DNA of 64,000 bases, taken from positions 124,001 through 188,000 of IMG/VR virus record IMGVR_UViG_3300009430_000004, one strand, 5' to 3'. The stretch's first letter is position 1. The number at the start of each line of letters is the position of its first letter. The position numbers were made by a program, and so were the translations under genes. Of this stretch, positions 10,674 to 64,000 are shown piece by piece. Below the pieces are notes generated by a model. It saw nothing but the letters and a program-made list of their open reading frames with translations, had not been told where the DNA came from and ran no database searches.

Positions 10674-12833
10674 ATGTCACATAGTGTTGCTATAACAGAT
10701 GTTTATAGAAGAGAGCTTTCAGAGTTTAATTCTAAATTCAACGACCCAAAGTTTTATATAAATAGAGAGTTAAGTTGGATAGAGTTTAACAAGAGAGTTT
10801 TACACCAAGCACTAAGAAAAGATATTCCTCTATTGGAAAGATTAAAGTTTCTAGGTATAACTAATTCAAATCTTGATGAATTCATAATGGTGAGATTTTC
10901 ATCTGTAATGAATAGAGTTATCAATGATTCTGAGGATGAAGATATATCAGGACTTAAACCCATAGATGAGTATCAGGAATTATTGGACCAAATCATGGAA
11001 TTTAAAAGTGTTCAAGCAGACTGTTATGATAGATTATCTAAAAAGTTAATTAAGACTAATATAATAATTAGTCAATATCAACAACTGAGCAAGAAGGAAA
11101 AGGAGCATGCAGAGAAGCTATTCTATAAAAATATCTTCCCATTACTAACTCCTATCACCTATGACACGACTAAAGATTTTCCATTGATAAGGTCTAAGCA
11201 ACTTAATATAGTTGTAGCATTAGAAGACAGAAAAAATGCTAATCTAAATGTAATCTCGATAATTCCCATTGATAGTGGATTGGATAGATTATATAAGATT
11301 GAAACCGACAATAAAGACGAGGATATTAAGTATATTTTATTAGAAGAGATAATTCATGCGTTCCTAAATAAGATATTCGTTAATAAGAATATCATATATA
11401 GTGGATGTATGAGAATTCTAAGGGAGGCTAATATTGAATTAGAACACAATAAAGACGTCTATATAATAGATAGGATGAAGCAAACCCTTATTCAAAGAGA
11501 GTTTAGTCGTCCGATATTCATGGATGTTCATGAGTCAATTCCTAGACATGTCCTAAAGATATTGACTAAGATATTTGATGTTGATAAGAAGCATGTCTTC
11601 AAATCAAAAGGTTTAGTAGACCCATCATTCTTAGCATCAATGCCTATAAAGAGCCATGCTTTGGAATACGAACACTTTGAACCACAATACCCTCAAGAGT
11701 TAATAGGTGAACATGATATGTTTACAGCCATAGATACAAATGACATAATCCTACATCATCCATATGAAAGCTTTGGACCTGTTATAAAATTCCTGGAACA
11801 TGCTGCTCAAGATGATAGTGTTTTAGTAATAAAACAAACTCTTTATAGAGTATCATCATATGAGTCACCAATAGTTGAAGCTTTATGTAAAGCTGCACAG
11901 AATGGTAAACAGGTTAGTGTTCTATTAGAGATTAAGGCTAGATTTGATGAAGATAGGAATATGTCCCTGATTGAGAAATTGAAATTATCTGGTTGTAAAA
12001 TAATCTATGGAGTTGAAGAGTTAAAAACTCACTGTAAGTTAATTCTTGTGGTTAGAAAAACAAGTAAAGGATTAAAGACATATTGTCATATAGGAACTGG
12101 TAATTATAATGATAAGACAGCAAAGATTTATACAGACTTATCTTATTTCACTTCAAATAATAAGATAGGTGAAGACCTGTTGTCAATATTTAATATATTA
12201 TCAGGATTTTCAGAACCTGCGAGTGAAGGAAACAAAATATTCTTCTCTCCATTCAATCTTAGAAGCAAATTATATACTCTGATTGATAGAGAGATAGAAA
12301 ATGCACGAAAGGGAAAGAAAGCATTTATAACTCTTAAATTAAATTCTCTATCTGATAAAGGAATGATACGGAAATTATACCAAGCTGCTTCATTCGGTGT
12401 TAAGATAACAATATTCTGTCGAGGAGTTTGTTCAATGAAACCTATCAATAAGAATATAACAATTAAAAGTCTTATAGGTAGATACCTTGAGCATAGTAGA
12501 ATATATTACTTTTACAATAATGATAAGTCTGAGATTTATATATCAAGTGCAGACTTGTTAACAAGAAACTTGGACAGAAGAGTAGAACTCTTAGTACCAT
12601 TAACAGATAGTGAAGTTAGGACAAAATTATTTGGCATTATAAGTGCTTATTTCAAAGACACTTGTAATACCTATATCATGAATTATAAGGGAGAGTATCA
12701 GCTATTAGCCAAGGAAGAATGTTTTAATCTGCATGAGTTCTTTATGGATGAAGCTATTAATAACTATAAGCTGAGAAATATTCCCAAGATAACATTTAAA
12801 AATAAAAAGAAATATGGGGATAGCAATGTTTAA
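10674..12833 (+). CDS. ppk1: Polyphosphate kinase 1
   Basis: NRELSWIEFNKRVL, SNLDEFIMVR, LHHPYESF, IKQTLYR, EIKARFDE, KTHCK (phospho-His motif), HIGTGNYN, GRYLEHSRIY, SSADLLTRNLDRRVE; full length. Confidence 0.96.
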   Translation: MSHSVAITDVYRRELSEFNSKFNDPKFYINRELSWIEFNKRVLHQALRKDIPLLERLKFLGITNSNLDEFIMVRFSSVMNRVINDSEDEDISGLKPIDEYQELLDQIMEFKSVQADCYDRLSKKLIKTNIIISQYQQLSKKEKEHAEKLFYKNIFPLLTPITYDTTKDFPLIRSKQLNIVVALEDRKNANLNVISIIPIDSGLDRLYKIETDNKDEDIKYILLEEIIHAFLNKIFVNKNIIYSGCMRILREANIELEHNKDVYIIDRMKQTLIQREFSRPIFMDVHESIPRHVLKILTKIFDVDKKHVFKSKGLVDPSFLASMPIKSHALEYEHFEPQYPQELIGEHDMFTAIDTNDIILHHPYESFGPVIKFLEHAAQDDSVLVIKQTLYRVSSYESPIVEALCKAAQNGKQVSVLLEIKARFDEDRNMSLIEKLKLSGCKIIYGVEELKTHCKLILVVRKTSKGLKTYCHIGTGNYNDKTAKIYTDLSYFTSNNKIGEDLLSIFNILSGFSEPASEGNKIFFSPFNLRSKLYTLIDREIENARKGKKAFITLKLNSLSDKGMIRKLYQAASFGVKITIFCRGVCSMKPINKNITIKSLIGRYLEHSRIYYFYNNDKSEIYISSADLLTRNLDRRVELLVPLTDSEVRTKLFGIISAYFKDTCNTYIMNYKGEYQLLAKEECFNLHEFFMDEAINNYKLRNIPKITFKNKKKYGDSNV

Positions 12834-50892: not shown

Positions 50893-53319
50893 ATGGAAAA
50901 GTTTGTAGATGATGTTATAGAGCATAAAGAGGATGACATCGAGAAAATACAGACTAAACCCAATATGTATATCAGCTACTCAGGTAGAAGGGGTTCTAAA
51001 CAGTTAGCTTATGAAAACATCAATAATGGTATTGATGAATGCATTAACCCTAATTCACCTGGAGATGAGATTGATATTGTAATTGATGAGACTGAAAACT
51101 CAATAAGTGTAACCGATAATGGTAGAGGAATTCAGTTTGAAAAGATGGAACTTGTCTGTACAAAGTTACAGGCTGGAAGTAAATTTACTAGAGAGGGAAG
51201 CGGTGGTTCTGCTGGTGAAAACGGTGTAGGTATGACCGCTATGAATGCTCTCTCAGACTGGTTTGAAATCATTTCATATAGATATGGTGAAAGAGCCAAG
51301 GTAAGATTTGAGTTAGGAAAGCTAGTTCAACCTCTTACTGTAAAGAAAGTATCTGGGGATAAACATGGAACAACGGTCGCATTTAGACCATCATCTATGT
51401 TCCTAGGAGAAGATTGTGCTATAGACTCTGATGAGTTATTGGCATGGACTGAAAAAATTATTTGTTTAGTACCACCTGAAATAAAGGTAAACTTTAATGT
51501 GATTAAGAAAGGAAAAGAATCAACAATCCAAAAGAAATTTAGAAATAAAAATGGTCTTTACGACTATTGCAAGAAGTTGGCTAAAAAGCCGCTTATAGAC
51601 CCAATTCATTTTATGAGAACAATGAAAATGATGGAGAGAGTGAATACAATAACACCATCTAATTTAGATGATGCTATGAAATCACCAAACTCGACATTTA
51701 AAGACGTAGAACGCTTTATTGGGCTAGAAGTGGCATTTACGTTCAATTCTGGTAGTGTAGACATGGTTGCTGATTCATTCTGTAATTTTATTAACACAGT
51801 AGAGAATGGTGTGCATGTAGATGCAGTTAAAACAGGTATATTACAATACCTAACTAAACAGACAAAAGATATGATGTCTGAGAAGGAAGCTAAGAATATT
51901 GATATAACCTTTGGTGATGCAGCTCAAGGTTTAGTATTAACAGTATACTTGAGCACTAATATGCAACCTCAGTTTGCATCTCAGACTAAAGAGAAGTTAA
52001 CAAATAACGATTTCTTCAAACCTCTAAGAGATATGTCTTATAGAGCTTTGGATGAATATTTTAAGAAGAATACAAAAGAGCTGAAGAAGCTTACTGATAT
52101 GATAAAGACTAATGCTAAGGCTAGAATAGAAGCCAACAAGGTTAGAAACTCAGTCATTAAAGGTGAGACAACTTCACTCGATGAGCATAAATTAAAGAAC
52201 TTTGCTCCTGCAAATAATAAGGGTAGAAATGAGTATAGAGAGTTATTCTTGATAGAAGGAGACTCAGCAATGGGCTCTGCTAGACAAGGAAGATTCGATA
52301 ATGACACTCAAGCACTATTTGCCCTTAAGGGAGTCCCCCTAAACTCATTTAGCTTAAAGCTTGACAAAGTATTATTAAATGATGAGTTTAGAGGATTAAC
52401 AAAAGTCTTAGGTTGTAACATAGGAGAAAGATTTGACATAACTAAGTTGAAGTATAAGAAGATTATCATCATGACTGACGCAGATATTGACGGTAATAGA
52501 ATTACATCACTTATTTGTGCATTCTTCTTAGTGCATATGCCTGAGATAGTAAAACAAGGTTATCTGTATAAAGCAGTTACGCCTTTATATAAAATAAAGG
52601 ATAATAAGAAACCTTTCATACTCAATAAACAAGAGTACATTGAAGTCTTTGAGGAAAGAGTTAGAAAGAACATCAGACTTATTAATCCTGAAACAAAGGT
52701 TGTATTCAAGGAAAAAGATATGAAGGAATTCTTGTTAAATAACAGAGAATACCTTGAAGAATTAGATAGAGTAGCAAATCATTTCGCAGTACATCCTATG
52801 ATAGTTGAATTCTTAGCTATACATATGGATGATAGCGACTTCCTCAAAAAGCTTAGAAAGAAATTCCCTGAATTGAAAGTTGATGAAGACAATGTATTGT
52901 CAGGTATATATGAAGGTAGATATCAGAATATAATACTTGATAAGATATTCAATAAAAGAGTCAACACTTTGAAGACTCTTATTAGAGAAGTCAATCAGAA
53001 TAAAGCTTATTACATTCTTCATGAAGTTAGAGGTAAGGAGTTCGAAGATAGAGGGTTAATGTCAATCGGTGAGTTGTTAACATTATGTGAAAAGTTCCAA
53101 CCTGAGATAGAAATGAGGTATAAGGGACTTGGTGAGTTAGACCCAGCTAAACTAAGAGAAACAACTCTTGACCCGAATAATAGAATACTTATCAAACTTA
53201 CTCTTGAAGACTTGGAAGCAGAGTTAACTAAGTTTAGAATATTACACGGAGATGACTCTGAAGAAAGAAAGAAGCTTATGGCACACTTCAAAATCAATAG
53301 GGAAGATCTTGATAACTAA
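50893..53319 (+). CDS. gyrB: Type IIA topoisomerase B subunit (GyrB/ParE)
   Basis: ENINNGIDE, DNGRGI, GENGVG (GHKL ATPase); EGDSA, MTDADIDG (Toprim); RYKGLGE. Confidence 0.95.
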   Translation: MEKFVDDVIEHKEDDIEKIQTKPNMYISYSGRRGSKQLAYENINNGIDECINPNSPGDEIDIVIDETENSISVTDNGRGIQFEKMELVCTKLQAGSKFTREGSGGSAGENGVGMTAMNALSDWFEIISYRYGERAKVRFELGKLVQPLTVKKVSGDKHGTTVAFRPSSMFLGEDCAIDSDELLAWTEKIICLVPPEIKVNFNVIKKGKESTIQKKFRNKNGLYDYCKKLAKKPLIDPIHFMRTMKMMERVNTITPSNLDDAMKSPNSTFKDVERFIGLEVAFTFNSGSVDMVADSFCNFINTVENGVHVDAVKTGILQYLTKQTKDMMSEKEAKNIDITFGDAAQGLVLTVYLSTNMQPQFASQTKEKLTNNDFFKPLRDMSYRALDEYFKKNTKELKKLTDMIKTNAKARIEANKVRNSVIKGETTSLDEHKLKNFAPANNKGRNEYRELFLIEGDSAMGSARQGRFDNDTQALFALKGVPLNSFSLKLDKVLLNDEFRGLTKVLGCNIGERFDITKLKYKKIIIMTDADIDGNRITSLICAFFLVHMPEIVKQGYLYKAVTPLYKIKDNKKPFILNKQEYIEVFEERVRKNIRLINPETKVVFKEKDMKEFLLNNREYLEELDRVANHFAVHPMIVEFLAIHMDDSDFLKKLRKKFPELKVDEDNVLSGIYEGRYQNIILDKIFNKRVNTLKTLIREVNQNKAYYILHEVRGKEFEDRGLMSIGELLTLCEKFQPEIEMRYKGLGELDPAKLRETTLDPNNRILIKLTLEDLEAELTKFRILHGDDSEERKKLMAHFKINREDLDN

Positions 53320-53320
53320 T

Positions 53321-53347
53321 GGGCTAGAAATCTAGCCCTATTTTTTT
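53321..53347 (+). terminator. Intrinsic terminator between gyrB and gyrA
   Basis: GGGCTAGA-AA-TCTAGCCC followed by a T tract, then TATATATTAT at 53352-53361. Confidence 0.75.
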
Positions 53348-53387
53348 AAAATATATATTATTGATATAGCAATGATGAGGGAGGTAA

Positions 53388-55793
53388 TTGTTAATGGGAA
53401 AGAAAGAAAAAAAGAAACGTAATAAAACTGCCGATTATAACGGCAATATAGAAATACGTAATATAGGAAATGAATGTACAGCACTTATGAAGATATTCGG
53501 TGCTAACAATAATCTTATGAGGCATCTTCCATTCGTAACAGATGGATTAAAGCCTGGTGAGAGAAGAATACTTTATACAATGTATGAGGAGCTTAAAGCT
53601 GTATATAATGGTAGATTTAAAAAGGTATCTGCTATTGTAGGGCAGACATTATTCTATCACCCACACGGTGAAGCTCCAGTATATGATACAATAACAAAAT
53701 TAGGTCAGCCATGGAATAACATTCAATGTCTAGTAGATGGAGGAGGAAACTTCGGTTCACCTATGGGAGATGATGCAGGAGCTTCTCGTTACATTGAGGC
53801 AAGATTGAGCTTCTATTCCCATAAGTGTTTCTTTGAAGAGTTTAGTCCTAACATAGTAGATATGAAGCTCAATTATCTTAATGATAGAAGAGAGCCTGAA
53901 TATCTTCCATCAAGATATCCAAATGTGCTGATTAATAATACCTTTGGTATAGGTTATGGAGTTGCATGTGGTCTTCCTACTTATAATCTAAAAGAAGTTT
54001 TAGCTTTAACCATAAAACTTTTGGATGACCCAGATTATGAAGATGTAACTCTTATACCTGATAGTCCAACAGGGGCTTATGTTATAGATGAAGGACAATT
54101 TAAAGAAATATCTGAGACTGGAAAAGGTAAGTTTAAAATGAGAGGTGTTATGGACATTAATGAAACTGAGAACACCTTGACTATTAGATCAGTACCTCTA
54201 CAAGTTTCAGCAATTGATGTTAAAAATGACATCATATCATTATTTGAGGAAAATAAGATACAGGGACTAAAGGATATTAGGGACGACTCTGATATCGGTT
54301 ATATCGAGTTGGTTCTATATCTTAAGAAAGAAGTAGACCCAGTATCCATAATGCATACTATATACACTAAGACAAATATGGAGAAGACATTCCCTGTAAA
54401 CTTCAAATTAATTGATGATTATGAGGATTTCGACTTCAATGTAAGGTCTTTACTTCTTAACTGGATTGACTTCAGAAGAGAAACAAAAAGAAGACTTTAC
54501 AATCATAAGCTCATTAGAGCTAGAGAAAGACAGCATATTCTCGAGATACTATTATTCATATTAAATAAGGATAATGCTGAGAAAACTCTGAAGATTGTAA
54601 AGCAGTCTGAAAATAAGAAAGAAATTATAAGTAAGCTTATGAAAGAATATGGTATATCATCATTACAAGCGGATACTATTTCGGAGATGAAAATGACTGC
54701 ATTCTCAAAGGAAGCTTATAAGAGATACGTGGAAGAGAAGAAAGATATTGACGACAAAGTTGAAAAGTTTGAGAAAATAGTACGTTCCTCAAAGAAAATA
54801 GACAAGATGATTAAAGAAGAACTTGAGGAAGGTATCAAACTATTCGGAGAGGATAGAAGAAGTAAGGTAATCACAATTGATGGTGAAACTAAGATAAGAG
54901 ATACTAATCACTTAGTTGTATTGACATTGAATGGTTTCATTAAGAAACTACCTGATAAGTCAACAACTATAGGATTTATCAATCAAGGTGACTATCCAAT
55001 TGAAATTATCGAGATTAAGAATACTTCTGATTTACTAATCTTCGATGAGACAGGAAAGATTTCTAAGTTGCCAATACATCTATTACCTAATAATGATTTG
55101 AACGGTGAGGGTGATAAGATAAGCAAGTATTGTGCAATCAATGGAAAGATTACAACAATAATTCCAAAACCTACAGATTTAGTGTTGTCTCAAGTTAAAG
55201 TACCAATATACTTCTTAATGGTTACAAAGAAAGGTGTCATCAAGAAGACTTTAGCTAATCATTATACTAACATCAAGAATGAGTTGTTAGGTATGATAGT
55301 TAAAGATGGTGATGAACTGAAATCAGTTAAGTTGTTAGCTGGAGATAAGAATGTCGTTATTTATACTAATAAAGGTTTTGGTGTAAGAATATCTTCAACT
55401 GAAATAAAAGAAACTAGCAGAATGAGTATAGGTGTTAAAGCTATTGAAATGGGACTTGATGAAGAAGTCATAGGGATGGATATAGTTAATGAGAAAGATA
55501 AATATCTATTCTGCTTAACCAATAAAGGCACAGGAAAGAAATCTTCATTGGACACTTTTGCTGTGATGGATAGGAATAGTAAACCTCTAAGATTAGTTAC
55601 TTTGGATGCTGACGAGGATTTAATGTTGGTTAGAGTGGTTAAGGGTAACGAGGTTTATAAAGCATATCTAAAGAATACAGTTGAAGAAATCAAATTGCAG
55701 GATGTAATAGAATTACCTAGATTATCTAAAGGTAAGAAACTAATTCCTGTAAGAAAAGGTGAGGTAATAATTGATATAAAAGAAGTGAAGTAG
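53388..55793 (+). CDS. gyrA: Type IIA topoisomerase A subunit (GyrA/ParC) with beta-pinwheel CTD
   Basis: DGLKPGERRILY, YHPHG, GNFGS, catalytic SRYIEARL, C-terminal 'T..G..K' blades. Confidence 0.95.
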   Translation: MLMGKKEKKKRNKTADYNGNIEIRNIGNECTALMKIFGANNNLMRHLPFVTDGLKPGERRILYTMYEELKAVYNGRFKKVSAIVGQTLFYHPHGEAPVYDTITKLGQPWNNIQCLVDGGGNFGSPMGDDAGASRYIEARLSFYSHKCFFEEFSPNIVDMKLNYLNDRREPEYLPSRYPNVLINNTFGIGYGVACGLPTYNLKEVLALTIKLLDDPDYEDVTLIPDSPTGAYVIDEGQFKEISETGKGKFKMRGVMDINETENTLTIRSVPLQVSAIDVKNDIISLFEENKIQGLKDIRDDSDIGYIELVLYLKKEVDPVSIMHTIYTKTNMEKTFPVNFKLIDDYEDFDFNVRSLLLNWIDFRRETKRRLYNHKLIRARERQHILEILLFILNKDNAEKTLKIVKQSENKKEIISKLMKEYGISSLQADTISEMKMTAFSKEAYKRYVEEKKDIDDKVEKFEKIVRSSKKIDKMIKEELEEGIKLFGEDRRSKVITIDGETKIRDTNHLVVLTLNGFIKKLPDKSTTIGFINQGDYPIEIIEIKNTSDLLIFDETGKISKLPIHLLPNNDLNGEGDKISKYCAINGKITTIIPKPTDLVLSQVKVPIYFLMVTKKGVIKKTLANHYTNIKNELLGMIVKDGDELKSVKLLAGDKNVVIYTNKGFGVRISSTEIKETSRMSIGVKAIEMGLDEEVIGMDIVNEKDKYLFCLTNKGTGKKSSLDTFAVMDRNSKPLRLVTLDADEDLMLVRVVKGNEVYKAYLKNTVEEIKLQDVIELPRLSKGKKLIPVRKGEVIIDIKEVK

Positions 55794-61462: not shown

Positions 61463-62182
61463 ATGGCTATAACAAAACAAACTAGAAAACAAATGGAAGC
61501 CTTAATATATTCCGTTTTCGATGCTCTCGACCCTTCCAAAACAAATAGTAATAAATACAAGGATTTCTTCGGGGAAATGTCGGATTCACAGTTCGATTCA
61601 TTTTTTAGAAATTTCTTTAAGGATGAAAATCAGTATTTAACTCTTGATGTTGTGGATTATGAGAGAGATTTTAAGATTGAAAATGTTGAGCAAGCAGCTA
61701 AGATACTTGGGGTTCCATTATTTGAGAAAGTAGTTATGCCATTTGTTAATAAAAATACAGATAAACCAGTCATTACTAAATATGAAGTACCTGTGGGATA
61801 TGTGCATGTTAAGAGGGTTCAGCAGATGCTCAGTAAGAAGAACACTACTTCTACTGAAATAGCTTCCCGTTCAGCATTAACAGGACAGGTTGTTGGAAAG
61901 GATAAGAATGCAAGAGACTCTGATGCTGAAAACTTCGCATTAGTTACGCTTAATGCTAATGAGACATTAAGAGAGTTTATGGGTCCAAGAGCTGACGACT
62001 TAGTAATGAAGAATGAAATGTACGCTTCAATAGCACAAAAGGGATATGTTTCCCTAGACCAATTAACTAACCATGTTGAAAATAAGACTACTTTAAATGC
62101 CCTCGATGTACATCTAATAGGTATGGGTATTAAGTCAGACCTTGTTACTCAAGGATTATTGGTTAAGAAATCACTAAAATAA
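61463..62182 (+). CDS. rpoB: Split RNA polymerase beta subunit, C-terminal fragment (probably virion RNAP)
   Basis: VPVGYVHVKRVQQMLSKK, RSALTGQV, ENFAL, LREFMGPRADD match the beta C-terminal motifs (GxxYxxKL, YSxxTQQP, EVWAL, LQExLTxKSDD); late promoter at 61422-61434. Confidence 0.8.
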   Translation: MAITKQTRKQMEALIYSVFDALDPSKTNSNKYKDFFGEMSDSQFDSFFRNFFKDENQYLTLDVVDYERDFKIENVEQAAKILGVPLFEKVVMPFVNKNTDKPVITKYEVPVGYVHVKRVQQMLSKKNTTSTEIASRSALTGQVVGKDKNARDSDAENFALVTLNANETLREFMGPRADDLVMKNEMYASIAQKGYVSLDQLTNHVENKTTLNALDVHLIGMGIKSDLVTQGLLVKKSLK

Positions 62183-63278: not shown

Positions 63279-63333
63279 ATTTTAATATTATAGGAACATA
63301 GAAATAATCGAAAATAATTGTGAGGTGATTATA

Positions 63334-63501
63334 ATGAGTGACAAAGGAGAATTGCACATTGTAACAGAAGTTGGGACATTTGGCGATTTAAATATAACCG
63401 ACCCAACAAAGAAAAAGGTGGCTAAAAAGGACGAAGATATGGATGCCCTTATAAGAGAAGCTCACCAGGAAAACATAAAAAATCTTGGACAGAAAAAGTA
63501 A
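63334..63501 (+). CDS. Small hypothetical protein (55 aa, not in ORF track)
   Basis: GAGGTG RBS; MSDKGELHIVTEVG...; late promoter at 63295-63307. Confidence 0.6.
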   Translation: MSDKGELHIVTEVGTFGDLNITDPTKKKVAKKDEDMDALIREAHQENIKNLGQKK

Positions 63502-63555
63502 TTGGTATGGGAGTTAGTCTCCCATGCCTAATTTTTATCGTAAGGAGATGGTTAT

Positions 63556-63702
63556 ATGGAAATTCAAACAATTGGTAATGATGAGGTAAAAATAGAGCCT
63601 CTACCAATAGAAGTGATAGAACCAATCGAACCACCAGTAATTGATTGTTCTGCTGTATTTTCAGCATTAGGGGTTCCCCCTCATTTACTAGGGGTTAAAT
63701 AG
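63556..63702 (+). CDS. Small Pro/Glu-rich protein (48 aa, not in ORF track)
   Basis: AAGGAG RBS; MEIQTIGNDEVKIEPLPIEVIEPIEPP...ALGVPPHLLGVK*. Confidence 0.5.
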   Translation: MEIQTIGNDEVKIEPLPIEVIEPIEPPVIDCSAVFSALGVPPHLLGVK

Positions 63703-63783
63703 AAAGTTAATAGTTAAAATAAATATATATTATCTTTCTGTAATCAAACATAAATAATCTAAATATAAAGGAGATGTATATCA

Positions 63784-64000
63784 ATGTTAAAAGTTTGCGT
63801 AATCGGTATAGGTAATGCTGGAAACCAAATAGCTGAGTTGGCTAAAAAGGAAAGAAACATTCCTGGGATTGCACTCAATTCAAGCGAGAAAGATATATCA
63901 ACACTATGTCACGTAGATAAGTTTATCGTAGGTGACGAAAAGGGTGCTGGTAAAGATCGTAATATCGCCAAAGAGTTTATGAGACAGAATATTCAAACAC
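63784..64000 (+). CDS. Tubulin/FtsZ-family GTPase (PhuZ/TubZ-like), 5' part; truncated by the window edge
   Basis: MLKVCVIGIGNAGNQIA (T1 loop), ALNSSEKD, KGAGKDR (T3-like); AAGGAG RBS; TATATATTAT at 63724-63733. Confidence 0.85.
   Translation, partial: MLKVCVIGIGNAGNQIAELAKKERNIPGIALNSSEKDISTLCHVDKFIVGDEKGAGKDRNIAKEFMRQNIQT

What the first reader, a model, noticed from the sequence alone, without database searches (positions are those of the whole stretch)
63724..64000. Tubulin/FtsZ-family gene in a probable Firmicute jumbo phage with split RNAPs
Seen: an ORF running off the window edge with VIGIGNAGNQIA and GAGKD motifs, an RBS and an early promoter; it is absent from the ORF track. Knowledge: PhuZ spindles position the phage nucleus in phiKZ-like phages of Gram-negative hosts, and TubZ partitions Clostridium phage c-st DNA. 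Inference: a spindle, possibly with a nucleus-like compartment, in a Gram-positive host.
Basis: partly seen in the sequence, partly recalled or inferred. Interest (0 to 1): 0.6.

Follow-up and report, generated by a model that had tools for sequence, protein, structure and literature searches.

The report
New tubulin lineage in jumbo phage
The open frame at the window's edge is the start of an intact, early-expressed tubulin/FtsZ-type filament protein in an uncultured 218-kb jumbo phage related to Bacillus phage AR9; it belongs to a large, undescribed phage tubulin lineage that occurs without the 'phage nucleus' shell protein and without the DNA-adaptor protein of plasmid TubZ systems.

Summary
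Window 63784-64000 holds the first 72 codons of a 376-aa gene that continues beyond the window and carries the GGGTGSG tubulin signature. It matches Pfam Tubulin (2.7e-20), folds confidently (pLDDT 88.7), and is closest in sequence and structure to TubZ of Clostridium phage c-st, then CetZ; PhuZ is much further.

The genome is a complete 218,088-bp phage with terminal repeats, from groundwater. It has two split multisubunit RNA polymerases, and its nearest cultured relatives are AR9/PBS1, Staphylococcus S6-type and Listeria LPJP1 phages. An exact match to the AR9 early-promoter consensus lies 63 nt upstream of the gene.

The protein belongs to a monophyletic family of at least 813 metagenomic clusters. 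This family is absent from the cultured AR9-like phages and present in 8 of 15 capsid-related large contigs. No chimallin is detectable in this genome or in the 15 relatives, with working positive controls, so a phiKZ-type nucleus is not supported. TubR and centromere repeats are also absent, so it is not a canonical type III partition system.

The conserved C-terminal peptide matches that of c-st TubZ. The gene forms an early two-gene unit with a conserved helical protein of unknown fold (g189).

Most likely it is a GTP-driven filament that positions phage DNA during infection. The cargo and the host are not established.

The parts
63721..63740 (+). Early (virion-RNAP type) promoter: AAATATATATTAT, a 6-nt spacer (CTTTCT), and the predicted +1 G at 63740. 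This gives a 44-nt 5' UTR.
   Evidence: Exact match to the AR9 early consensus AAATATATATTAT-(6N)-G (PMC5312081). The core motif TATATATTAT-6N-R occurs 46 times in the genome against 1-6 in Markov simulations; 43 of 46 are intergenic (8% of the genome is intergenic) and 39 lie within 150 nt upstream of a same-strand gene. The motif is conserved 63-70 nt upstream of the tubulin gene in 4 of 5 family loci.
63768..63773 (+). Shine-Dalgarno site AAGGAG, 10 nt upstream of the ATG
   Evidence: Read directly from the sequence.
63784..64000 (+). 5' part (codons 1-72) of the 376-aa tubulin/FtsZ-superfamily GTPase gene (P0001). The gene ends at genome 188914, 914 nt beyond the window (L001:1785-2915). 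The window part holds the T1 loop GIGNAGN and the T3 loop GAGKDR. Beyond the window lie T4 GGGTGSG (residues 96-102), T7 NSIDEKD (D198 and D201 invariant), the C-terminal domain, helix H11, a disordered linker and the conserved tail peptide EVDLGDIFDSYMKK.
63504..63540 (+). Terminator-like hairpin (10 pairs, 6 G-C) plus T-run. It closes the upstream unit, so the tubulin gene starts a new transcript.
   Evidence: L023 11504-11528, which is window 63504-63528; inverted repeat I22.
63325..63501 (+). Small conserved ORF (58 aa) just upstream of the tubulin unit. It is also present upstream of the tubulin in L004 and L005. Function unknown; whether it belongs to the system is unknown.
   Evidence: No NCBIfam hit.
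61463..62182 (+). g184, a multisubunit-RNAP piece (phrog_3233 'RNA polymerase beta subunit'). It is the conserved left-hand neighbour of the tubulin module in related phages.

Best explanation
Window 63784-64000 is the start of an intact gene for a polymerising tubulin/FtsZ-superfamily GTPase. The protein belongs to a distinct, phage-specific lineage: neither PhuZ nor canonical TubZ, with c-st-type TubZ as its nearest characterised relative.

The phage is an uncultured 218-kb myovirus, distantly related to AR9/PBS1-like jumbo phages, with two split multisubunit RNAPs and no chimallin.

Shown:
- The gene, all its GTP-binding and catalytic loops, and a confident tubulin fold.
- Membership of a large monophyletic family.
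- An AR9-type early promoter upstream.
- A two-gene unit with g189: promoter, tubulin, g189, terminator.
- Location inside a replication and transcription gene block, between RNAP pieces and next to a UvsX/RecA-like recombinase.
- A C-terminal peptide of the same pattern as the c-st TubZ tail tip.

Inferred: the injected virion RNAP transcribes the gene early in infection. The protein then assembles GTP-dependent dynamic filaments. As in c-st TubZ, its flexible tail tip contacts the next subunit and recruits a partner. The filaments move or position replicating phage DNA (or an assembly site) inside the cell. This would act as an efficiency-boosting accessory function, as PhuZ does, but without a protein shell.

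The cargo adaptor is unknown. g189 and g190 are candidates only.

The confidence of 0.55 is for the whole statement including the inferred positioning role. That the gene encodes a tubulin-superfamily GTPase of a distinct lineage I hold at about 0.95.
For: Identity and fold:
- Pfam Tubulin 2.7e-20.
- The family profile against PDB sequences ranks c-st TubZ at 2.6e-21 and 1.4e-20 (the second over the full length), CetZ at 1e-18, archaeal FtsZ at 1e-13 and PhuZ at 3.7e-5.
- The AF2 model has pLDDT 88.7. Foldseek's top hits are c-st TubZ 3v3t/4xcq, TM 0.87, rmsd 2.6 A.

Active-site conservation: G8, G10, G13, G54, G56, K57, G97, G98, G100, S101, D198 and D201 are invariant in 59 family members. 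The loops are aligned against references.

Tail: EVDLGDIFDSYMKK compares with c-st EIDINDFFSKYM and Clostridia INVNDLFAQYL, while PhuZ tails differ. In c-st TubZ the tail tip binds the upper subunit, TubR-centromere and TubY (PMC5322520).

Family: at least 813 clusters, many on 200-270 kb contigs. Monophyletic at 99/99 and 100.

Phage type.

Early promoter.

Transcription unit and synteny.

No chimallin, with working controls.

Patchy, accessory-like distribution: 8 of 15 relatives. This parallels PhuZ, which is absent from a third of Chimalliviridae and is non-essential (PMC12908238).
Against: - No filament, localisation or expression data exist. The only sequencing run that holds this DNA is the probable source metagenome, and no RNA run holds it.
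- The cargo is unknown.
- The nearest characterised relative works in plasmid and prophage partition, not in lytic-cycle positioning.
- g189 and g190 persist in one complete relative (G007) that has lost the tubulin, so the neighbours do not depend on it.
- A chimallin analogue with no sequence similarity cannot be excluded. Only sequence profiles were applied genome-wide.
- The host is unknown.
Confidence: 0.55

Rival explanations
1. It is a TubZ-type partition motor. The filament segregates the phage genome as an episome during pseudolysogeny or a carrier state, as c-st TubZ does for the c-st plasmid prophage. It would use an adaptor unrelated to TubR, for instance g189 or g190.
For: c-st TubZ is the closest solved relative by profile and by structure, and it shares the C-terminal tail peptide. 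The nearest non-phage homologs are tubR-tubZ operons in Bacillota genomes. A comparative-genomics review links jumbo-phage tubulins to pseudolysogeny (PMC7824862). g189 is co-transcribed with the tubulin and occurs only in this clade.
Against: No TubR homolog lies upstream in any of 5 family loci, whereas 10 of 16 Bacillota TubZ loci have one. There are no iteron or centromere repeats near the gene. No tyrosine integrase is present. The gene has a virion-RNAP early promoter and sits in a lytic replication module. g189 is all-helical with no recognisable DNA-binding fold. Complete relatives exist without the gene.
Confidence: 0.2
2. It is a PhuZ-like spindle that centres a shell-enclosed phage nucleus. 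The shell protein would be too divergent from chimallin, or unrelated to it, to be recognised.
For: The phage shares the multisubunit-RNAP heritage of phiKZ-like phages. In one tree the family is sister to PhuZ at 94/81. PHROG 'tubulin PhuZ' matches at 1.4e-11. Several large early proteins remain unannotated, for example g122.
Against: The chimallin profile finds nothing in this genome or in 15 relatives, while it detects even Goslar chimallin at 7.8e-54. The closest cultured relatives (AR9-like) are reported to lack chimallin (PMC13282480). The grouping with PhuZ is not robust: AU p=0.17 for the alternative, and the grouping is lost when 8 PhuZ sequences are used. The tail and the T5 loop are of the c-st type, not the PhuZ type.
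Confidence: 0.08
3. It acts on the host rather than on phage DNA. As a tubulin-family protein with an FtsZ-like C-terminal peptide, it would perturb host cell division or FtsZ-partner binding, for example to enlarge the infected cell.
For: Expression is early. The tail loosely resembles the FtsZ C-terminal peptide: compare ...DALDIPTFLRNR of Robertmurraya FtsZ. This is inference only.
Against: The FtsZ equivalog model scores 46.9 bits against a cut-off of 295. The tail matches c-st TubZ far better than FtsZ. The phylogeny places the family away from FtsZ. No direct evidence exists.
Confidence: 0.07

Closest known systems
TubZ of Clostridium botulinum phage c-st (CST189; PDB 3v3t, 4xcq) and its tubR-tubZ relatives in Bacillota genomes
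   Same: It is the best solved match by family profile (2.6e-21; full-length alignment) and by structure (TM 0.87, rmsd 2.6 A). It shares T4 GGGTGSG, T3 G-x-G-K-D/E-R, the length of the T5 loop and the T7 D-x-x-D/E. It also shares the C-terminal tip motif D-x-x-D-F/I-F-x-K-Y. Both are phage-borne and linked to Bacillota.
   Different: Identity is only about 19-20%. The two form separate well-supported clades. This family has no TubR upstream, no TubY (hhalign probability 0.2%) and no centromere repeats. It is driven by a virion-RNAP early promoter in a phage without an integrase, and it is paired with the unrelated helical protein g189.
PhuZ of phiKZ-like (Chimalliviridae) phages
   Same: Both are tubulin-family GTPases of jumbo phages that carry two split multisubunit RNAPs. 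Both are accessory genes with a patchy distribution (PMC12908238). Both have an acidic C-terminal tail. PHROG 4733 matches at 1.4e-11.
   Different: Similarity is much weaker: the A1 profile scores PhuZ at 17-26 bits against 79 for c-st TubZ, and at 3.7e-5 in the PDB search. PhuZ has GGGSGS/GGASGS in T4, a 2-residue deletion in T5 and a different tail motif. There is no chimallin partner here. A sister relation to PhuZ is not robust.
CetZ of archaea (PDB 3zid, 4b45, 4b46)
   Same: Second-best solved relatives by sequence and fold. Some family members are auto-annotated 'tubulin-like protein CetZ' by JGI.
   Different: CetZ forms a separate clade with Bathyarchaeia homologs and FtsZ. It is a cellular cell-shape protein of archaea. 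The tail differs.
AR9/PBS1-like jumbo phages (Takahashivirus), Staphylococcus S6-type phages, Listeria phage LPJP1
   Same: These are the closest cultured phages: capsid about 26% and RNAP beta' 35-38% identity. They share two multisubunit RNAPs, a GroEL, and the same early-promoter consensus.
   Different: None of AR9, LPJP1, S6, phiR1-37 or JD-Fnp4 has a match to the tubulin family profile (positive controls) or to g189 and g190. The capsid divergence puts this phage in a separate, uncultured clade.

Membership tests
Tubulin/FtsZ superfamily | GTPase domain with the T1 glycine loop and the T4 signature GGGTG(S/T)G | tested here: met
   T1 GIGNAGN and T4 GGGTGSG (residues 96-102). Pfam PF00091 scores 73.9 bits against a cut-off of 33. 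The glycines are invariant in 59 homologs.
Tubulin/FtsZ superfamily | Two-domain fold (Rossmann-like GTPase domain, core helix H7, C-terminal activation domain) with T7-loop acidic residues that complete the neighbour's active site | tested here: met
   AF2 pLDDT 88.7, pTM 0.84. At least 500 PDB matches with E<=0.001; every row shown is TubZ, CetZ or FtsZ. T7 is NSIDEKD, with D198 and D201 invariant.
Tubulin/FtsZ superfamily | GTP-dependent polymerisation into protofilaments | not testable with these tools
   Needs purified protein or imaging. Only the sequence requirements are met.
TubZ / type III partition system (TubZ-TubR-tubC, with or without TubY) | TubZ-clade motor protein | tested here: inconclusive
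   c-st TubZ is the nearest solved relative and shares the tail motif. However, the family is a separate clade from the c-st/Bacillota TubZ clade (99/99 against 100/98). Grouping the two together is neither supported nor rejected (AU p=0.17).
TubZ / type III partition system (TubZ-TubR-tubC, with or without TubY) | Adjacent centromere-binding protein TubR (winged helix, about 80-110 aa) | tested here: not met
   tblastn with c-st TubR finds a homolog directly upstream of tubZ in 10 of 16 Bacillota loci and in none of the 5 family loci. The conserved upstream 58-aa ORF has no family hit.
TubZ / type III partition system (TubZ-TubR-tubC, with or without TubY) | Centromere of iterated repeats (tubC/tubS) next to the operon | tested here: not met
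   The repeat finder on 3.5 kb around the gene gives only two-copy families of the chance type and no iteron array.
TubZ / type III partition system (TubZ-TubR-tubC, with or without TubY) | TubY regulator (MerR-type HTH plus coiled coil) downstream | tested here: not met
   The g189 profile against c-st TubY gives hhalign probability 0.2%. g189 is a helical protein without an HTH match.
PhuZ / phage-nucleus system (Chimalliviridae) | Chimallin (ChmA) nuclear-shell protein in the same genome | tested here: not met
   phrog_4795 gives best E=2.6 in this complete genome and 0 of 15 in relatives. Positive control is 4 of 4, including Goslar at 7.8e-54. This is a sequence-profile test only.
PhuZ / phage-nucleus system (Chimalliviridae) | Membership of the PhuZ clade, with its T4/T5 variants and acidic 'knuckle' tail | tested here: not met
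   PhuZ is a separate 100%-supported clade on a long stem. Its T4, T5 and tail motifs differ. The PHROG 4733 match is only 45 bits over the GTPase domain.
FtsZ | Score above the curated cut-off of the FtsZ equivalog model TIGR00065 | tested here: not met
   46.9 bits against a cut-off of 295.2. The family is separate from the FtsZ clade in the trees.
AR9-like/phiKZ-like jumbo phages with two multisubunit RNAPs | Two sets of split beta/beta' RNAP genes | tested here: met
   Rpb2_6 domains in g192 and g87. Rpb1_2 domains in g135 (48.3 bits summed over two stretches, above the cut-off) and g49 (14 bits, below it). PHROG RNAP families match g24, g87, g184 and g192.
AR9-like/phiKZ-like jumbo phages with two multisubunit RNAPs | AT-rich virion-RNAP early promoter consensus upstream of early genes | tested here: met
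   The AR9 consensus is from PMC5312081. There are 46 motif copies, 43 of them intergenic and 39 correctly placed and oriented, against 1-6 expected. Transcription from these sites was not measured.

The most novel reading that the evidence does not exclude
This family is a third, independent phage cytoskeletal system. It would be a tubulin filament that organises infection in shell-less jumbo phages of probably Gram-positive (Bacillota) hosts, using new adaptor proteins (the co-transcribed helical protein g189, perhaps with g190) in place of TubR or chimallin. A stronger version holds that the tubulin was already present in the common ancestor of the multisubunit-RNAP jumbo phages, before the phage nucleus arose. 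On that view this lineage is the slowly evolving counterpart of PhuZ, and the AR9-like cultured phages lost it.
Probability: 0.3. Interest if true: 0.75.

Novelty: new variant of a known kind. Interest (0 to 1): 0.55.

Why it matters
Phage tubulins are known from two settings: PhuZ spindles that serve the chimallin nucleus in Gram-negative hosts, and TubZ-TubR partition of plasmid prophages in Clostridium and Bacillus. This gene defines a large, widespread lineage (at least 813 sequence clusters) that fits neither setting. It lies in jumbo phages related to AR9 that have no chimallin and no TubR.

If it forms filaments during infection, cytoskeleton-based organisation of phage replication would not be tied to the phage nucleus and would extend to a new host range.

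It also gives a slowly evolving, well-alignable relative for rooting the fast-evolving PhuZ clade, which bears on how the tubulin and the nucleus were assembled during jumbo-phage evolution.

On the practical side, the protein and its tail peptide are easy targets for in vitro polymerisation work even though no host is in culture.

Tried and rejected
- tblastn of the tubulin against 50,697 cultured phage records: no match at E<=1e-3. Megablast of 20 kb of the window: no match. Cultured phages therefore gave no direct homolog, and profile methods were needed.
- Complex prediction of tubulin plus g189: 'no answer', score 0.00, controls not run. This is not evidence for or against binding.
- g189 fold searches: Foldseek against PDB found nothing at E<=0.001. 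VIA-align wide gave Z<=6.2, which is generic helical-repeat resemblance below the noise level for helical proteins. The ESM Atlas gave TM<=0.44. No fold assignment was made.
- g189 and g190 against Pfam, PHROGs, NCBIfam and PDB sequence profiles: nothing.
- g122 (a large early unknown, considered as a possible shell analogue): no Pfam or PHROG hit, and the atlas gives only viral hypothetical clusters. This does not decide the question.
- The first tree with extra PhuZ sequences used a wrong-strand ORF for phage Noxifer and is discarded. One search replaces it.
- Family as sister to PhuZ: seen at 94/81, but not upheld. AU p=0.17 for the alternative, and the grouping is lost with broader PhuZ sampling.
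- g189 and g190 as obligate tubulin partners: weakened, because the complete relative G007 keeps g189 and two g190 copies while its tubulin slot holds DUF6273, DUF7448 and one unknown ORF.
- Host inference from Shine-Dalgarno usage (48% of crudely called starts have a 4-mer core; background 10%) and from tRNAs (none found): uninformative.
- No RNA run holds the sequence. The large representative-protein search was not used because the word search and family scans settled the protein's identity.

Full report
**Observation**

It starts with ATG at window 63784 and is still open at the last base of the window. The motifs VIGIGNAGNQIA (residues 6-17) and GAGKD (54-58) are present. An AAGGAG ribosome-binding site lies 10 nt upstream of the ATG.

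The 72-residue fragment alone is only suggestive (Pfam Tubulin E=0.031, below the cut-off). The window is bases 124001-188000 of a 218,088-bp IMG/VR virus record with direct terminal repeats, rated 100% complete. There the frame continues to a 376-aa protein (P0001) with the canonical signature GGGTGSG at residues 96-102. The whole protein matches Pfam Tubulin at 2.7e-20 and Tubulin_2 at 1e-6.

**What the protein is**

A word-index search finds at least 813 homologous clusters at roughly 48-65% identity among those listed. Many are on contigs of 200-270 kb. They carry only automatic names such as 'cell division GTPase FtsZ' or 'tubulin-like protein CetZ'.

In an alignment of 59 members (A1), every nucleotide-binding glycine, K57, and the T7-loop aspartates D198 and D201 are invariant. 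The T7 aspartates are the residues that complete the neighbouring subunit's active site in a protofilament.

The family profile searched against PDB sequences ranks the relatives as follows:

| Relative | E-value |
|---|---|
| TubZ of Clostridium phage c-st (4xcq; 3v3t over the full length) | 2.6e-21; 1.4e-20 |
| CetZ | 1e-18 to 1e-15 |
| Archaeal FtsZ | 1e-13 |
| pXO1-type RepX/TubZ | 6e-10 |
| PhuZ | 3.7e-5 |

An AlphaFold2 model built on the family alignment is confident (pLDDT 88.7, pTM 0.84), apart from a disordered tail at residues 352-376. Foldseek gives the same order: c-st TubZ first (TM 0.87, rmsd 2.6 A), then CetZ, Bacillus TubZ and FtsZ. Among predicted viral structures, the best matches are uncultured myovirus 'cell division' proteins, ahead of PhuZ. 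The FtsZ equivalog model scores 46.9 bits against a cut-off of 295.

**What the phage is**

PHROG and Pfam scans of the large genes show the following:

- Myovirus structural genes: terminase, major head protein, tail sheath and a block of tail-fibre genes.
- A GroEL.
- DNA polymerase, a two-subunit type II topoisomerase, ribonucleotide reductase and an NAD-dependent ligase.
- Several 'RNA polymerase beta subunit' families typical of phiKZ/AR9-type phages.

Pfam domain searches of the genome find two beta-type catalytic domains (g87, g192) and two beta'-type pieces: g135 inside the window, and a weaker hit in g49. Further RNAP pieces are g24 and g184. This indicates two split multisubunit RNAPs.

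By capsid (about 26% identity) and RNAP beta' (35-38%), the closest cultured phages are AR9/PBS1 and related Bacillus phages, Staphylococcus S6-type phages and Listeria phage LPJP1. Yersinia phiR1-37 and Fusobacterium phages are more distant. GC content is 33.5%. The only public run that holds the DNA is a groundwater metagenome, which is probably the source.

The host is not established. A Bacillota host is suggested by three things:

- The hosts of the cultured relatives.
- The nearest non-phage homologs of the tubulin (28-31% identity) lie almost entirely in Bacilli and Clostridia genomes.
- One family member (45% identity) was binned with a ruminal Bacilli MAG.

**The promoter**

The published AR9 early (virion-RNAP) promoter consensus is AAATATATATTAT-(6N)-G(+1) (PMC5312081). 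The identical string lies at window 63721-63740, which predicts a transcript start 44 nt before the ATG.

The core motif occurs 46 times in the genome, against 1-6 in composition-matched simulations. 43 of the 46 are in the 8% of the genome that is non-coding, and 39 lie within 150 nt upstream of a same-strand gene. Those genes include RNAP pieces, topoisomerase, ligase and polymerase.

The motif is conserved 63-70 nt upstream of the tubulin start in 4 of 5 family loci. Early transcription by the injected RNAP is thus a well-founded inference. It was not measured.

**Gene context**

The order g184 (RNAP piece), a variable stretch, tubulin, g189, g190, g191 (UvsX/RecA-like recombinase) and g192 (RNAP beta piece) is conserved in relatives whose tubulins are only 51-60% identical.

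A terminator-like hairpin precedes the promoter, at window 63504-63528. None lies in the 55 nt between the tubulin and g189, and g189 has its own AGGAGG site. A hairpin plus T-run follows g189, and another follows g190. Tubulin plus g189 therefore looks like a two-gene early unit.

g189 (287 aa) folds confidently (pLDDT 92.3) as an all-helical protein. It has no specific structural relative. g190 (302 aa) is unannotated.

**Tests of the two known models**

Nucleus model:

- The chimallin family profile (phrog_4795, identified with phiKZ gp54) finds nothing in this complete genome (best E=2.6).
- It also finds nothing in 15 capsid-related contigs.
- The same search recovers chimallin in phiKZ, 201phi2-1, RAY and the divergent Goslar.
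- Reviews state that AR9-like phages lack chimallin (PMC13282480).

Partition model:

- In c-st the operon is tubR-tubZ-tubY.
- A TubR homolog is detected directly upstream of tubZ in 10 of 16 Bacillota loci, and in none of the five family loci.
- g189 is not TubY-like.
- No iteron array lies near the gene.
- No tyrosine integrase is present.

The protein does share with c-st TubZ and its Clostridia relatives a conserved C-terminal tip: EVDLGDIFDSYMKK here, EIDINDFFSKYM in c-st. PhuZ tails are different. In c-st TubZ this tip contacts the next subunit and is the binding site for TubR-centromere and TubY (PMC5322520). This argues that the tail here is also a filament-regulating and partner-binding element.

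**Phylogeny**

In a maximum-likelihood tree of 48 sequences (LG+C20 PMSF), the family is monophyletic (99/99) and the c-st/Bacillota TubZ clade has 100/98 support. The family groups with PhuZ at 94/81, on a PhuZ stem 2.4 substitutions per site long.

The alternative, in which the family groups with the c-st clade and excludes PhuZ, is not rejected (delta lnL 2.0, AU p=0.17). With eight PhuZ sequences, and without the two longest branches, the family no longer pairs with PhuZ, and the deep nodes have 80-83% support. One search is discarded because it used a wrong-strand ORF.

The robust statement is that this is a distinct lineage. Its position relative to c-st-type TubZ, PhuZ and the CetZ/FtsZ group is unresolved.

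**Distribution**

The family profile finds no gene in AR9, LPJP1, S6, phiR1-37 or JD-Fnp4. It does detect c-st TubZ and three of four PhuZ genes as controls.

Relatives were then collected through the capsid protein, which is independent of the tubulin. Among them, 8 of 15 large contigs carry the gene. Two contigs rated complete (capsid 69% identical) and the more distant group (48-49%) lack it. This is the pattern of an accessory gene. PhuZ is likewise absent from a third of Chimalliviridae and is non-essential (PMC12908238).

g189 and g190 are adjacent to the tubulin in all 8 positive contigs and are missing from 6 of the 7 negative ones. In the complete contig G007, g189 and two g190 copies remain while three unrelated ORFs fill the tubulin slot. 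The three genes tend to travel together, but the neighbours do not strictly need the tubulin.

**Conclusion**

It is not a PhuZ, and there is no sign of a chimallin nucleus. It is nearest to c-st TubZ but lacks the partition apparatus. The best-supported mechanism is a GTP-driven, tail-regulated filament that positions phage DNA or an assembly site during lytic infection. An episome-partition role is the main rival.

[quoted passage not shown] I found no description of this lineage in the searchable literature. That library is incomplete, so the lineage should be treated as not known to me rather than proven new.

Noticed in passing
window 10674-12833 (+); genome 134674-136833: g142 is a complete four-domain polyphosphate kinase PPK1 (PP_kinase_N, middle, C_1 and C_2; up to 231 bits) with the AR9-type early promoter motif upstream. 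This is an unusual auxiliary gene for a phage.
   Followed up: partly
L011:8382-10355 (+); genome 52382-54358, outside the window: g59 encodes a methyl-accepting chemotaxis protein (dCache_1 plus the MCP signalling domain). A phage-borne chemoreceptor is rare and may hint at a motile host.
   Followed up: no
whole genome; for example window 63721-63740 and 45 further sites: The AR9 early-promoter core TATATATTAT-6N-R occurs 46 times, almost all intergenic and correctly oriented. The virion-RNAP promoter is therefore conserved between AR9 and this phage even though their capsids are only 26% identical.
   Followed up: yes
L130 (G007:C1:84000-94000): In the tubulin-less relative G007, the homologs of g184 (RNAP piece) and g191 (recombinase) are each split into two blocks by inserts of about 330 and 720 bp. 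These may be introns, inteins or homing-endonuclease insertions. g190 is tandemly duplicated, and the tubulin slot holds DUF6273, DUF7448 and an unknown ORF.
   Followed up: partly
L014:608-12526 (-); genome 77605-89526, outside the window: A giant ORF of 3,973 aa. It was not scanned against any family library.
   Followed up: no
window 16930-37521 (-); genome 140930-161521: A block of seven large genes (651-1,261 aa). Several have tail-fibre or tail-protein PHROG matches, and three have no match at all.
   Followed up: partly
window 50893-55793 (+): A two-subunit type II DNA topoisomerase (phrog_543 and phrog_551). The second subunit is preceded by the early promoter motif.
   Followed up: no
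L009:12785-14497 (+); genome 34785-36500: A phage-encoded GroEL-type chaperonin (phrog_5725, 1.8e-90). A comparative-genomics review (PMC7824862) reports HSP60-family chaperones as frequent in jumbo phages with multisubunit RNAPs.
   Followed up: no
L045 and L047 (Robertmurraya siralis and Alkalihalobacillus sp. genome contigs): Two Bacillaceae genomes carry tubulin-like genes that score highest of all non-family sequences against the family profile (150-157 bits). In the trees they fall outside the c-st TubZ clade. Each has a 94-134 aa ORF directly upstream. Their context (prophage, plasmid or chromosome) was not examined.
   Followed up: no
L002 (IMGVR_UViG_3300025106_000001, 103,797 bp): A second IMG/VR contig is 99-100% identical at the protein level over the 18 genes compared, g178-g195 (17 kb). 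It is presumably a fragment of the same phage from the same or a sister sample.
   Followed up: no
window 63556-63702 (+): A 48-aa ORF with its own AAGGAG site lies between the terminator-like hairpin and the tubulin promoter. It was not seen to be conserved in relatives, and whether it is a gene is unclear.
   Followed up: partly
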